From: Guillardia theta CCMP2712
Lineage: Eukaryota; Protista; Cryptophyta
Length of the DNA stretch: 64,000 nucleotides
Assembly: GCF_000315625.1 (NCBI RefSeq)
Contig: NW_005434654.1
Span: 252,273 to 316,272, forward strand
Direction of reading: 5' to 3'
Positions within the stretch are counted from its first letter, which is position 1. Each line of letters begins with the position of its first letter. Under the pieces are notes generated by a model that was not told where the DNA came from, did not search any database, and worked only from the letters and a program-made list of their open reading frames with translations. This document shows positions 10,401 through 14,610 of the stretch, in pieces. The translations under genes were made by a program, and so were the position numbers.

Positions 10401-11201
10401 CTACAGTCCTGAGGCCTTGCTCATCAAACTTTGTACTCAACCTTTTCTTCAGCTCTCCCATCTTCTCCGTCCCTCTTAGCACTCATCCCCTCCCTCAGCT
10501 CCCCCATCTTCGTCTGTCGCTCCCTCCCTCCCTCTCCTCGTCTTCATGTCTCATTCTCATCATTGCTTCGTCGCCATTACCTTCATCTTGACCATCTCCG
10601 ACAAGGTTATGGACCCCACCTCACCATCTTCCATATGCTCTTCACCCCTACCCCCTCCATTCCATGAATATTAAAGGCCAAAATACCCCTATTTACAAAG
10701 AATGAATAATTCACACCGGTAGCCAAACGATTGTACCTCTACCCCTATAAATTGGCCACAAGCAATAGAAAAGTACCGGTGATGGAAACGTCCACCCCCA
10801 CCGTGGTTCATAACAGTTCTACAACCGGTACTACTTCCTTCTCCCCCGGCTCCCCTGCCGCCATCCGCCCGCCGGCTCTCGAGGAACCTTGCCGGCTCTT
10901 GGCCATCGCTCCATCTCAACAGCCCCGCTCCTCCTCCTCACAGCTCTCACCTCCCTCATCTTTGCGTCCAGGTTCTCATTTTCTACCATCCCTCTTGCGT
11001 CTTTCCCTGACGCTCAAACTATCAGAGGAAATCAGACCCGGGGCTCTGGCTCAACGAGGTCTTGTGCGACTCTGAAAGTGCACGAGTAGATGTGTTGAGG
11101 AGCACTGAAAACAATTGGTTGCCAGGTGATTGAACATGCACTTGTTCTGATCTTCTTATTGATGCTGCCTGTCCAGCACTGTATTTATTGCATTGGCGAC
11201 G

Positions 11202-13765
11202 ATGGTGGCTTTGGTGAGAAAGGGAAGCATGCTGAGAATCCCGCGCACTAGAGGACCTTTAGAAGTTGCTGTCTTGTCCGTCCTTCTTCTCCAATCCTTT
11301 GCGCCCTCCTACATCCCCATAGCTGACGGCAGCCAACAATTCACACCCTCAAATCCTGCAGCCGTGAAGTGGAGGTAACAAGATTTGTTGGGACTCTTCT
11401 GTATGTAATTAGCTTCTTACTTTTACATTTTTCCAGCTTTCTATTGTCTAATCCTGAGGAAAGCGACTTACGTCATGCATCGTATAAGCCTCGTGCAGAC
11501 TTCCTGCGATTGCGAGGAGGGTCTGGGTTCAGAATCGGTGGAGCGTGGGGCTCGCCAATAGAGTCGAGGATCTCTTCGGAGGAATTGAAGAAAAACATGC
11601 AGACATTGCTGGAGAAGAATCCGTCTGGAATCATGGGACGAGACCTGAGGAGGTTGTACAAAGAGGTCAGACTCCGAACCCTGCTATGACCCTGCGATGT
11701 TTCAATTGAGTTTCACGGCAGATGTTCTCAAGGGAATTGCCTCTATCTGACTTCAACGTTCAAAGACCCATCGAATTGATTGAGAAAGAACTTGCAGACA
11801 CCGTCTACTACACGCGTGAGGTATGGTCTCAGTCGGAAAGAAAACAGATTTTCAAGTTCTTGCAGGGCGATGGAGATGTGAAATATTTCTTGAAAAAGAA
11901 GACTTTGGACTCCGGGCCAAGCCCTCTCTGGCATTTGACATGTCATGGAGATGATAATTGCATTTCTGTCGTACCTGGAGACACCAGCTTTGAAGAAATG
12001 AAATTACAGGTGAGCAATTTACATACTGATCTCTGGATTTTGCGAATCTGATTTTGAATTTTTGTGAAGGCTTACTGGTCGATATGGTGCGGACAAAATG
12101 TTCAGCAGATACAAGAGAGAGAGAAAAAGATGGAGCAAGAAAGCAAGCAACGGTTTGACAGTTACCAAGCTTCTAAGAATGCTCAGGCCAACCAACAATC
12201 AAACTCGAATCCTTCAAATCCTTTTGGATCGAATCAAAATCCATTTGCATCTGCATTTGGACAACCACAGGCACAGAGCAGCATTTTTCCTGCATCAGGA
12301 AATTCGTTTGGCAATAGCTTAGGAGGAGGCCTTTTCGGTCAATCCAGCCAGCAGCAGCCTCAAAACCCAATGCAGCCACAGCAACAGTCCAGCATCCAGC
12401 CAATTTCAGGGTTCCTGACCAACACTCCATCAACAACTGCAAACAGTGGCAACAATTTGTTCTCGGGTGGAATATTTGGATCACAATCTCAGCCAGCAAT
12501 GCAAAAACAAGAGCCGCTGGTCCCTCAGGAGAATAGAAATGTGCAATCTGGATCTTTGTTTTCGTCGCCGCAACCTTTCCAACAGTCGAATTTGTTCGGA
12601 TCTTCCACCGCAGGCCAGAGTTCAATCTTTGGGAGCAACCCTCCTGCACCTGCGGCTCAGAATCCAACCGGAACATCTCTGTTTGGAGGTTCCCAGCAAC
12701 CGGGAGCATCAAACTCGTTGTTTGGTGGTACAAACCCGCCCCAGCCAACTACCACCGGAGGTCTCTTTGGGAGTAACAATGCTCTTGGAGGCGGAAGCGG
12801 TGGATTATTCGGAAACCCTGCCAACACAGCATCGCCAACTTCATCGGGCGGTTTGTTTGGGTCGACTATAAATGCCCCCAAACCACCGCAGACAAGCCTG
12901 TTTGGAAGTGGAAGTAGCAATTTATTCGGTCAAGGACCTCCTACAACCACGCAGAGCAACCTTTTCGGCGGTAGCGCACCGACTTCAGGTCTGTGGGCGA
13001 AACTTTGAAAAACTCGTCCTGATGTGAAAATCAAGGTGTTGGGAACACAGCCACTGGAACGTCTGGGGGATTGTTTGGCAGCACAAATCCTACGTCTTCC
13101 TCACTTTTCTCTTCACCAAATAGTAACTTGTTTGGAGGTGACCTTTTGCCAATTGTGTGCAATTGATAGTATCTCACTGACGCTGGATTTGCTTGCTCAT
13201 CGTGCAGGGTCGACACAATCAGGTGAGCAGATAGCACCTTTTGTCGTGCTTTTGTTGTGTATACATCGGTAATGCATGTGTAGGTGGAGGGCTCTTCGGC
13301 GGCAGCATGAATCCGCAGCAACAGCAACAGCAACAGCAACAGCCGCAGCAACCAACAGGATTGAGCGGAGGATTGTTTTCGAGTGGAGCCCAACCCTCAA
13401 CAACTGGGGGATTATTCGGAGGTCTCTCGCCTGCCCAGCAGAATTCACAGTCCTCCAGCTTCCTCGGTAACACTCCCTTCGGAGGAAATACGCAGGTACG
13501 AGCTCTATGCCGTGAAAGATTGATCTGATGCCGAGCTTAGCAGGGTGGCCTTGGTTCGATCTTTGGCTCCCAGCAGCCTCAGCAGCAGCAGCAGCAGCAG
13601 CAGAGCACACTGAGCCCTATTCCAAACGGTGCACAGGTCTGTACTCCCTGAATGATATCTATCCTGCGAGTGAAAGACCTTCAGGCTGGTGCTTTCGGCC
13701 AACAACAAAATCCCAATCCATGGAACCCAAATCCAACAAATCCTCCCTCCCCCTGGACCCGATAA
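11202..13765 (+). CDS. FG/GLFG-repeat nucleoporin-like protein with signal peptide, LRLRGG, LOTUS/OST-HTH domain and NUPL2/GLEBS-like motif
   Basis: Leader AVLSVLLLQSFA, then FLRLRGGSG. LLEKNPSGIMGRDLRRLYKE|MFSRELPLSDF...IELIEKELADTV resembles LOTUS. PLWHLTC...GDTSFEEMKLQAY follows. More than 20 GLFG/SLFG/NPFG repeats. Stop at 13763-13765. Confidence 0.75.
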
Positions 13766-14009
13766 GATGGGATGTTTAGATCATGAATGTCGCGGAAGTT
13801 ATGGCTCGCTGAAGAACTTGTAGGAATGTGACAAACTGACAAGCAATACTTGAATGAATCTGTCTATCATGCTTGCCAATTCGTTCAGCTGCAAACCGAA
13901 TGACAGTACTTTTCCGATTGCGGATAGAGAGCAGTTGACCGTACCTGTGACCGACTGCGATCCTAGAAACGATGCTTTCAAGTTCCACAGCCGCGTGACT
14001 GACCGTGAA

Positions 14010-14610
14010 GGATCACAGATCAGGCTCATCACTGAGTCACCAGGATCGGACCGTTAGCCATAGATCACGGGGGAGCCAGTCACTGCACAGTGTCAGGGCC
14101 CTCTCTGCTTTCAAGTTTTAACCTGAGTAGCCCAATCGGATCAGATCCGACGGTCCGGCGGGCGCCGGCCCGGAGGATCCGATAAAAACATTCATCAGTT
14201 ACTTAGTTACCGTCCGGCCCGGGGGCGGGCCTAACCCGGTGACTGACCGTACAGGCTCAGGCTCGCTGTCTTTTCTCTTCTCGCCGTATGGCCTGTGCGC
14301 CGGACAGTGTCAGGGTCAAGCCTCTCAGTCCACTCACGGGGGCATGCCATTGTCCACGCACTGATTTTTAATTTGCTTACTAAGTTACCTTCAAGTTGAG
14401 TAAAGCATTCGAAGCCCAAGGCTCGCTCCCGTTGAACCATACAAAGTTGAATTCGAAAATCCGGCCCGACGGTCCGACTCGGCATAACTTACCGTGCCGC
14501 GGCGAGTCCCAGGCCGGCACCCGGCCGCGTCCGGGCGGCGGCGCGGCCGGCCCGTTTAAGCCTGAAGTTCGACCGGGCCCGGCCCACTGCCGGGCCCGCC
14601 GGACGATTAG
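14010..14610. other. GC-rich palindrome-rich intergenic island
   Basis: Dense CCGG/GGCC/TGAC words; hairpin TCGGATC-A-GATCCGA at 14136-14150. Lies directly upstream of the + gene at 14640. Confidence 0.6.

What the first reader, a model, noticed from the sequence alone, without database searches (positions are those of the whole stretch)
11202..13765. Signal-peptide-bearing GLFG nucleoporin with LOTUS domain: candidate host-encoded component of the nucleomorph pore/mRNA export system
Seen in sequence: after splicing one intron (~11375-11436), the protein reads hydrophobic leader, transit-like spacer, LRLRGG, a LOTUS/OST-HTH-like domain, PxW...DxSFEEMKLQAY, and roughly 400 aa of GLFG/SLFG repeats. 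No Nup98 autoprotease domain is evident. Established: FG nucleoporins normally lack signal peptides; SxEELR-type motifs occur in NUPL2/Nup42-family proteins and in the Rae1-binding GLEBS of Nup98; LOTUS domains bind RNA or DEAD-box helicases; cryptophyte periplastid/nucleomorph proteins use signal + transit leaders; nucleomorph pores have very few recognisable nucleoporins. Inference: this is an imported FG-nup for the relict endosymbiont nucleus, coupling RNA/helicase binding to the pore.
Basis: partly seen in the sequence, partly recalled or inferred. Interest (0 to 1): 0.88.

Follow-up and report, generated by a model that had tools for sequence, protein, structure and literature searches.

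The report
Candidate FG pore protein for the nucleomorph
This expressed gene of the alga Guillardia theta encodes an FG-repeat, nuclear-pore-type protein whose import leader is the kind carried by proteins sent to the alga's relict second nucleus (nucleomorph), a nucleus thought to lack any such pore protein.

Summary
Spliced transcript contigs from three studies give a 2445-nt mRNA and a 689-aa protein (ATG 11202, stop 13765), with 9 coding introns rather than one. The order is hydrophobic leader, spacer, LRLRGG, LOTUS fold, SFEEMKLQAY helix, and a 428-aa almost uncharged GLFG domain. There is no Nup98 protease domain. The public model (GUITHDRAFT_105374) starts at Met106, so it lacks the leader.

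Every cryptophyte ortholog with N-terminal sequence keeps a signal-peptide-like leader followed by RLRGG.

New here: LRLRGG closes a whole class of presequences in this genome. Of 73 sampled sites, 42 lie 28-109 aa after an in-frame Met plus hydrophobic stretch; shifted frames gave 1-2 of 73. The cargo is cytosolic or nuclear in type: eEF1A-like, eL22, HAT1, Rae1 and a histone H2A. That H2A is probably the one shown by immunofluorescence to sit in the nucleomorph.

Periplastid/nucleomorph targeting is therefore well supported. A role at the pore, and binding to Rae1, remain inference; similarity to the Nup98 GLEBS motif is limited to a 12-residue core.

The scan had already noted LRLRGG presequences elsewhere in this genome (s1-430491, s1-434697).

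The parts
10834..11201 (+). 5'UTR in three exons (10834-10971, 11026-11125, 11177-11201), with introns 10972-11025 and 11126-11176
   Evidence: Spliced contigs of X1 and X7. One short uATG only; in-frame TGA at 11106.
11202..11303 (+). Signal-peptide-like leader, aa 1-34. The n-region has 5 Arg/Lys, the hydrophobic core is VAVLSVLLL, followed by QSFAPS.
   Evidence: Hydropathy (11-residue windows average up to 2.65). Analogous leaders in orthologs. SignalP was not available.
11304..11503 (+). Spacer (transit-peptide-like), aa 35-80, interrupted by intron 11375-11436
   Evidence: Its length is not conserved: about 10-50 aa in orthologs.
11504..11521 (+). LRLRGG, aa 81-86: the proposed end of the presequence and processing site
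   Evidence: Nearly invariant RLRGG in 13 orthologs. It is the recurrent end of SP-type leaders genome-wide.
11522..11557 (+). Conserved stretch SGFRIGGAWGSP, aa 87-98: the proposed mature N-terminus
   Evidence: S87 and W95 are conserved.
11570..11898 (+). LOTUS/OST-HTH domain, aa ~103-178, spliced over introns 11666-11721 and 11821-11865
   Evidence: Pfam OST-HTH 15-18 bits in four orthologs. PDB profile top hit is TDRD7. The AF2 model has alpha-beta-alpha-alpha-beta-beta order, and its top Foldseek hits are TDRD7, TDRD5, Oskar, MARF1 and Tejas LOTUS domains.
11914..12090 (+). Conserved GPxPLWxLTxHGDDxC...GDxSFEE(M/L)KLQAYW segment, aa 184-222, with a GLEBS-core-like motif; intron 12010-12069 lies inside it
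   Evidence: Invariant columns. Core aligns with G. theta Nup98-type GLEBS modules. Helix predicted at aa 209-222.
12100..12204 (+). Long charged helix, aa 226-260 (EREKKMEQESKQRFDSYQ...)
   Evidence: AF2 helix H151-185 of the model.
12208..13762 (+). GLFG-type FG domain, aa 262-689, over 6 exons (to 12988, 13036-13137, 13208-13222, 13284-13495, 13541-13636, 13685-13762). It ends in the conserved SPWxR.
   Evidence: Pfam Nucleoporin_FG. 22 FG in the whole protein and 6 charged residues in these 428 aa. Joints.
13763..13877 (+). Stop codon and 3'UTR up to the end of the transcript contig

Best explanation
This is a nucleus-encoded Guillardia theta protein that is imported into the periplastid compartment. 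There it most likely acts at the nucleomorph envelope as a Nup98-like cohesive FG barrier or mRNA-export protein.

Proposed path. (1) A cleavable ER signal peptide takes it into the ER lumen, which is continuous with the outermost plastid membrane. (2) The spacer acts as a transit-peptide-like signal for the ERAD-derived translocon of the second membrane. (3) The presequence ends at LRLRGG, a copy of the ubiquitin C-terminal tail, and is probably cut off after GG by a periplastid deubiquitinase-type peptidase. (4) The mature protein (from Ser87) carries a minimal LOTUS domain (binding RNA or an RNP), an SFEE(M/L)KLQAY helix that may bind the co-targeted Rae1, and a 428-aa uncharged GLFG domain that would form the selective phase.

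Shown: the gene model, its expression, the domains, conservation of the leader, and the existence and cargo of the LRLRGG presequence class. Inferred: cleavage after GG, localisation, pore association and Rae1 binding.
For: Transcripts include the leader.

Orthologs share a hydrophobic leader plus RLRGG. They come from Hanusia phi, from a marine cryptophyte whose neighbouring gene is 80% identical to a protein labelled Tamp in EukProt (taken to be Teleaulax amphioxeia), and from freshwater metagenomes. A gene call that seemed leaderless has an upstream in-frame MFPLLLLAFFELGVAGASGA.

LRLRGG occurs 353 times against 255 for the reversed control. Of 73 sampled sites, 42 follow an in-frame Met plus a charge-free hydrophobic 9-mer, against 2/73 and 1/73 in shifted frames and 12/219 antisense.

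Cargo of that class includes an eEF1A-like GTPase whose canonical start GKEKHH follows GG directly, eL22, HAT1, an aaRS-type OB fold, a glycosyltransferase and histone H2A. It also includes Rae1. Only one G. theta H2A has an SP plus transit-like extension, and it localises to the nucleomorph (PMC5443833).

A second gene on the marine cryptophyte contig also has SP plus LRLRGG.

The FG domain passes the Pfam threshold and is 1.4% charged. Cryptophytes have an algal-type Rae1 but no known nucleomorph FG-nup (PMC6411479).
Against: There are no localisation data for this protein, and no SignalP or ASAFind run was possible. No scaffold-anchoring domain (Nup98 protease domain, Nsp1-type coiled coil) was detected.

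GLEBS similarity is weak (12 columns, hhalign probability 13%), and phmmer against PDB found no Nup98.

If the signal peptide is cut after APS, the new N-terminus is Tyr, and an aromatic +1 residue would normally point to the stroma. One cargo of the class is RETICULATA-like, a plastid-envelope family.

The H2A identity with the published nucleomorph H2A rests on 'only one has an extension', not on a sequence match. Joining of the presequence exon to the H2A and Rae1 exons was read from the DNA, not from RNA.
Confidence: 0.55

Rival explanations
1. The protein is imported into the periplastid compartment but is not a pore component. It scaffolds an RNA-protein condensate in the relict cytoplasm, as animal LOTUS proteins do in perinuclear germ granules, with the FG domain driving phase separation.
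For: The targeting evidence is the same as for the best explanation. LOTUS proteins and FG-bearing Vasa homologs organise perinuclear granules in animals (papers listed, e.g. PMC8331183, PMC12050070). No NPC-anchoring domain was found.
Against: The long uncharged GLFG arrays are typical of Nup98-class nucleoporins. An SFEE(L/M) core like that of GLEBS is present, and Rae1 is co-targeted. The two readings overlap if the granule sits on the pores.
Confidence: 0.22
2. It is a host nuclear-pore FG-nup held in the pore membrane by an uncleaved N-terminal anchor, like vertebrate Pom121.
For: It has an N-terminal hydrophobic segment followed by an FG domain. Membrane-anchored FG-nups exist (own knowledge).
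Against: The hydrophobic cores are only 9-15 residues long and are followed by small-residue, cleavage-like motifs. The positive charges lie N-terminal to the core, which would put the C-terminus in the lumen. The leader also belongs to the LRLRGG class, whose cargo is periplastid or nucleomorph in type.
Confidence: 0.06
3. It is a secreted, ER-lumenal or plastid-stromal protein whose FG-like repeats are merely low-complexity sequence.
For: A signal peptide alone is compatible with secretion. The possible +1 Tyr or Phe after cleavage in G. theta and in P0012 is compatible with stromal import.
Against: LOTUS is a cytoplasmic or nuclear RNA/RNP domain. The repeats pass the Pfam Nucleoporin_FG threshold. 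Most orthologs have a likely +1 Ala or Cys. The cargo of the LRLRGG class is cytosolic or nuclear in type.
Confidence: 0.05

Closest known systems
Nup98 / Nup100 / Nup116 (GLFG nucleoporins with a Rae1/Gle2-binding GLEBS motif)
   Same: A long, nearly uncharged GLFG/SLFG/NLFG domain. An SFEE(L/M)(K/R)...Y core like the GLEBS C-terminal half. A Rae1 that seems destined for the same compartment.
   Different: There is no autoproteolytic C-terminal domain. The motif lies before, not inside, the FG array and is about 2+2 residues shorter than in G. theta's own GLEBS modules. It has an N-terminal LOTUS domain and an ER-type leader.
Nucleomorph-related, signal-peptide-bearing Nup98 of chlorarachniophytes (Irwin & Keeling 2019, PMC6411479)
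   Same: A host-encoded FG protein with a signal peptide, in an alga whose nucleomorph otherwise lacks pore proteins, paired with an endosymbiont-type Rae1.
   Different: The chlorarachniophyte protein is a recognisable Nup98 homolog of green-algal origin. This protein has no detectable Nup98 homology outside the repeats and was found only in cryptophytes.
LOTUS/OST-HTH proteins (Oskar, TDRD5/7, MARF1, Tejas; C. elegans MIP-1/2)
   Same: A winged-helix LOTUS fold (TM up to 0.72 to TDRD7) combined with disordered, phase-separating regions near nuclear pores.
   Different: None of those carries an FG-nucleoporin domain or a secretory leader. The extra C-terminal helix of the helicase-binding extended LOTUS was not predicted here.
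NUPL2 / Nup42 (hCG1)
   Same: An FG protein of the mRNA-export face. A SPEELRLEY-like motif in it is recalled from memory only.
   Different: No CCCH zinc finger was detected. The Gle1-binding motif was not tested. It is not filed as a member.
Ubiquitin-fusion precursors (ubiquitin-eL40, ubiquitin-eS31) processed after LRLRGG
   Same: The same hexapeptide sits immediately before the functional protein. In the eEF1A-like gene it replaces the initiator Met.
   Different: There is no ubiquitin fold in front of it: no Pfam ubiquitin hit, and leaders vary from about 30 to 85 aa. What precedes it is a signal peptide plus a variable spacer.

Membership tests
FG nucleoporins (Pfam PF13634, GLFG class) | FG-repeat domain above the curated threshold, with uncharged spacers | tested here: met
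   72.6 bits against a cut-off of 32.2. 22 FG in the protein; 6 charged residues in the 428-aa FG domain.
FG nucleoporins | A domain that anchors the protein to the pore scaffold | tested here: not met
   A Pfam scan of the full protein finds only Nucleoporin_FG and a sub-threshold OST-HTH.
FG nucleoporins | Localisation at nuclear (here nucleomorph) pores | not testable with these tools
   Needs immuno-EM or a tagged protein.
Nup98 family | Autoproteolytic domain (PF04096) | tested here: not met
   No hit in the protein. The genome-wide six-frame search was uninformative.
Nup98 family | GLEBS motif that binds Rae1 | tested here: inconclusive
   G. theta GLEBS modules hit the solved Nup98 GLEBS chains 4owr_B and 3mmy_B. 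Profile-profile comparison with this family aligns only DTSFEEMKLQAY with NYSFEELRVGDY, P 0.002, probability 13%.
LOTUS / OST-HTH (PF12872) | Sequence match above the Pfam threshold | tested here: inconclusive
   15.3-18 bits against 23.8, at the same position in four orthologs. UniRef names the protein 'HTH OST-type domain-containing'.
LOTUS / OST-HTH | Winged-helix LOTUS fold | tested here: met
   The top 17 Foldseek hits are LOTUS domains, with probability up to 1.00, target-normalised TM 0.53-0.72 and rmsd about 3 A. The model's pLDDT in this region is only 55-82 and E-values are 0.02-0.2.
Cryptophyte bipartite (periplastid/nucleomorph) targeting signal | N-terminal ER signal peptide | tested here: inconclusive
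   The n-, h- and c-region features are present and the character is conserved in all orthologs. No SignalP or HECTAR was available.
Cryptophyte bipartite targeting signal | Transit-peptide-like part without an aromatic +1 residue (periplastid rather than stroma) | tested here: inconclusive
   The cleavage site is unknown. The likely +1 is Ala or Cys in most orthologs, but Tyr or Phe is possible in G. theta, Hanusia and P0012.
LRLRGG-terminated presequence class (defined here) | SP-like leader, then a spacer that puts LRLRGG 28-109 aa after the start Met, then LRLRGG before the mature part | tested here: met
   aa 1-86 fit. The class is supported by 42 of 73 sampled sites against 1-2 of 73 in control frames, with Rae1 and H2A among the cargo.
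Ubiquitin / ubiquitin-like domain | Beta-grasp fold before the GG | tested here: not met
   No Pfam hit in aa 1-98. Ortholog leaders can be as short as about 30 aa.
NUPL2 / Nup42 | N-terminal CCCH zinc finger and C-terminal Gle1-binding motif | tested here: not met
   No zinc-finger family in the Pfam scan. The Gle1-binding motif was not tested.

The most novel reading that the evidence does not exclude
Cryptophytes end many periplastid and nucleomorph presequences with the ubiquitin tail LRLRGG. The deubiquitinase of the ERAD-derived import machinery would then double as the transit-peptide peptidase. Among the cargo, this LOTUS-GLFG protein and an LRLRGG-bearing Rae1 would form a minimal, non-canonical transport gate and mRNA-export module for a nucleus that has lost the canonical pore complex.
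Probability: 0.3. Interest if true: 0.95.

Novelty: new variant of a known kind. Interest (0 to 1): 0.85.

Why it matters
Irwin & Keeling (PMC6411479) found only host-type, leaderless nucleoporins in cryptophytes, plus an algal-type Rae1 of unclear role. They concluded that nucleomorphs work without a canonical pore complex.

The public model of this gene lacks its first 105 residues, so a leader-based screen using that model would not have seen the leader.

A conserved, leader-bearing GLFG protein, and a Rae1 with the same kind of leader, give concrete candidates for how RNA and proteins cross the nucleomorph envelope.

The LRLRGG rule gives a simple sequence handle for listing periplastid and nucleomorph proteins. 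It also suggests a testable link between ubiquitin-dependent import and presequence removal. I found no open-access paper that mentions it.

Tried and rejected
- Ubiquitin-like fold in the leader: rejected. There is no Pfam hit, and ortholog leaders are too short and too variable.
- GLEBS region against PDB sequences (phmmer): no Nup98 hit.
- PF04096 and PF13634 six-frame searches of the genome: uninformative. They returned nothing, or only this gene.
- Synteny between G. theta and the marine cryptophyte contig: none.
- ESM Atlas feature search: no usable hit.
- Rae1 complex prediction: not run. I could not obtain a full-length, stop-free Rae1 by reference. 
- Trm112-like cargo (L097): seen by eye only and not supported by Pfam, so not counted.
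- Further Pfam scans of 20 other ORF segments downstream of LRLRGG sites: only the histone hit.

Full report
ORGANISM AND GENE MODEL

The window is contig C20:252273-316272 of an 87.1-Mb, 669-contig assembly. The gene corresponds to GUITHDRAFT_105374 of Guillardia theta CCMP2712.

I laid contigs of three presumed RNA runs from three studies (X1, X6, X7) on 10500-14400. They carry GT..AG joints at every intron, including 12 interposed letters that stem from a 15-nt micro-exon at 13208-13222. Joining the exons gives 2445 nt, the exact length of the X1 contig, and a 689-aa ORF from ATG 11202 to the stop at 13763-13765.

The transcript starts at or before 10834. Two introns lie in the 5'UTR, and an in-frame TGA at 11106 precedes the ATG. 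So transcripts do not start downstream of the leader.

The same protein, called from a 2405-nt transcript-like contig, is in the protein collection as P0178 (residues 13-701). The public model P0019 begins at Met106 and has a wrong last exon.

DOMAINS

The large exon matches Pfam Nucleoporin_FG (4.9e-20). The protein has 22 FG, mostly GLFG, NLFG or SLFG. The 428-aa repeat region has only 6 charged residues.

OST-HTH/LOTUS scores 15-18 bits (cut-off 23.8) at the same position in four orthologs. A PDB profile search puts TDRD7 first.

An AF2 model of aa 76-263 has low overall confidence (pLDDT 56) but 55-82 in the LOTUS part, with alpha-beta-alpha-alpha-beta-beta order. Its best 17 Foldseek matches are LOTUS domains of TDRD7, TDRD5 and Oskar; MARF1 and Tejas LOTUS domains appear further down the list. 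No extra helix directly follows the last strand, so the model resembles the minimal LOTUS type.

Helices are predicted for SFEEMKLQAYWSIW and for a charged stretch at aa 226-260. No protease domain, zinc finger or ubiquitin fold was found.

ORTHOLOGS

An exhaustive HMMER search with exon 2 found 18 proteins. Sixteen are family members and two are unrelated large LOTUS proteins.

The family members come from three kinds of source. One is Hanusia phi. One is a marine metagenome organism whose full-length, intron-free gene (P0020) sits beside a gene 80% identical to a protein labelled Tamp in EukProt (taken to be Teleaulax amphioxeia), 68% to Rhodomonas and 62% to Guillardia, so it is a cryptophyte. 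The rest are freshwater and marine metagenome fragments that break off at intron positions shared with G. theta.

Every member with N-terminal sequence has a positively charged start, a 9-15-residue hydrophobic core with small residues after it, and a spacer of variable length. Then come a nearly invariant RLRGGS, W95 and the LOTUS domain. One gene call that seemed leaderless has an in-frame upstream MFPLLLLAFFELGVAGASGA.

The gene is single-copy in G. theta.

THE LRLRGG CLASS

There are 353 matches against 255 for the reversed control.

Of the first 100 listed, 73 truly encode LRLRGG. In 42 of these the same open frame holds, 28-109 aa upstream, a Met followed by a charge-free hydrophobic 9-mer. 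The same test gives 2/73 and 1/73 in shifted frames and 12/219 on the antisense strand. This gene is not among the 42, because an intron separates its leader from LRLRGG.

Downstream ORFs identify the cargo:
- an eEF1A-like GTPase whose canonical GKEKHH...GHVDSGKS start follows GG directly;
- ribosomal protein eL22;
- HAT1;
- an aaRS-type OB fold;
- a group-1 glycosyltransferase;
- a methyltransferase;
- a weak CBM20 hit;
- a RETICULATA-like protein.

A histone H2A exon lies about 250 nt downstream of another such leader. Onuma et al. (PMC5443833) report that exactly one of the four G. theta H2A proteins has a signal plus transit-like extension, and they localised it to the nucleomorph by immunofluorescence. 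I infer that this is the same gene.

A second gene on the marine cryptophyte contig also has a leader plus LRLRGG.

I found no paper that combines RLRGG or LRGG with Guillardia, periplastid, transit peptide or nucleomorph. That library covers open-access papers only.

RAE1

A probe for Rae1 hit C12:726932, 1.4 kb downstream of one of the sampled LRLRGG sites. Reading the locus gives MAACRG...CATLFLSCCLLLS...LRLRGGSSWSSWG...NPENDPEV, followed by exons that match Rae1 blade by blade. One exon hits the solved 'mRNA export factor' chains (4owr, 3mmy) over its full length at about 1e-10.

A second Rae1-like gene lies on C272. This fits Irwin & Keeling's two cryptophyte Rae1 types, for which they could not predict signal peptides because the N-termini were incomplete.

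GLEBS QUESTION

G. theta has several FG/GLEBS modules. One of them hits the solved Nup98 GLEBS peptides. A profile-profile comparison with the conserved segment of this family aligns only the 12-residue core (P 0.002, probability 13%). Rae1 binding is therefore a hypothesis. I could not run a complex prediction (see Tried and rejected).

READING

Targeting to the periplastid compartment or nucleomorph is, in my estimate, about 0.8 likely. Within that, a pore or export role is the best fit, for two reasons: the GLFG domain is of the Nup98 class, and the literature reports no other FG candidate for the cryptophyte nucleomorph. A perinuclear RNP-condensate role is a serious rival.

Cleavage after GG is inferred from the eEF1A-like junction and from the conservation of the motif. 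It has not been shown.

Noticed in passing
G000 contigs C1-C22; loci L010-L126 (motif at oriented position 601 of L010-L082): LRLRGG recurs as the end of signal-peptide-type leaders across the G. theta genome: 42 of 73 sampled sites, perhaps 150 or more genes by extrapolation. The cargo is cytosolic or nuclear in type. This looks like an undescribed presequence rule.
   Followed up: partly
G000:C12 about 725,400-727,400 (L127, L107, L049): A Rae1 gene with a complete signal-peptide-like leader ending in LRLRGG. A second Rae1-like gene lies at G000:C272 about 28-31 kb (L129).
   Followed up: partly
G000:C4:101,180-102,000 (L024, L092): A histone H2A exon lies just downstream of an SP + LRLRGG exon. 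It is probably the nucleomorph H2A localised by Onuma et al. 2017.
   Followed up: partly
window 11202-11516 and 13637-13765: The public model GUITHDRAFT_105374 (P0019) lacks the first 105 residues and mis-splices the last intron, which gives it a different C-terminus. The transcript contigs support the 689-aa model.
   Followed up: yes
window 13745-13762; the P0020 C-terminus: The last residues, SPWTR in G. theta and SPWGR in the marine cryptophyte, are conserved after otherwise divergent FG repeats. This could be a docking motif.
   Followed up: no
window 14262-14299: A short stretch is covered on both strands in raw RNA reads and in contigs that continue into unrelated sequence, with a fixed A>T difference at 14288. 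It may be a dispersed repeat or a small RNA-like element.
   Followed up: no
G000 loci L130, L131, L135, L136: FG repeats plus a bona fide GLEBS motif are followed by a conserved non-nucleoporin region (...QFDQGKIKFE...YPLSREYPYFEV...), in several paralogs. The earlier notes s1-431725 and s1-432854 appear to describe these.
   Followed up: no
L007:9940-11340 (- strand), also L008 and L009: The marine cryptophyte contig that carries the ortholog has a neighbouring gene with its own leader + LRLRGG and no Pfam domain.
   Followed up: no
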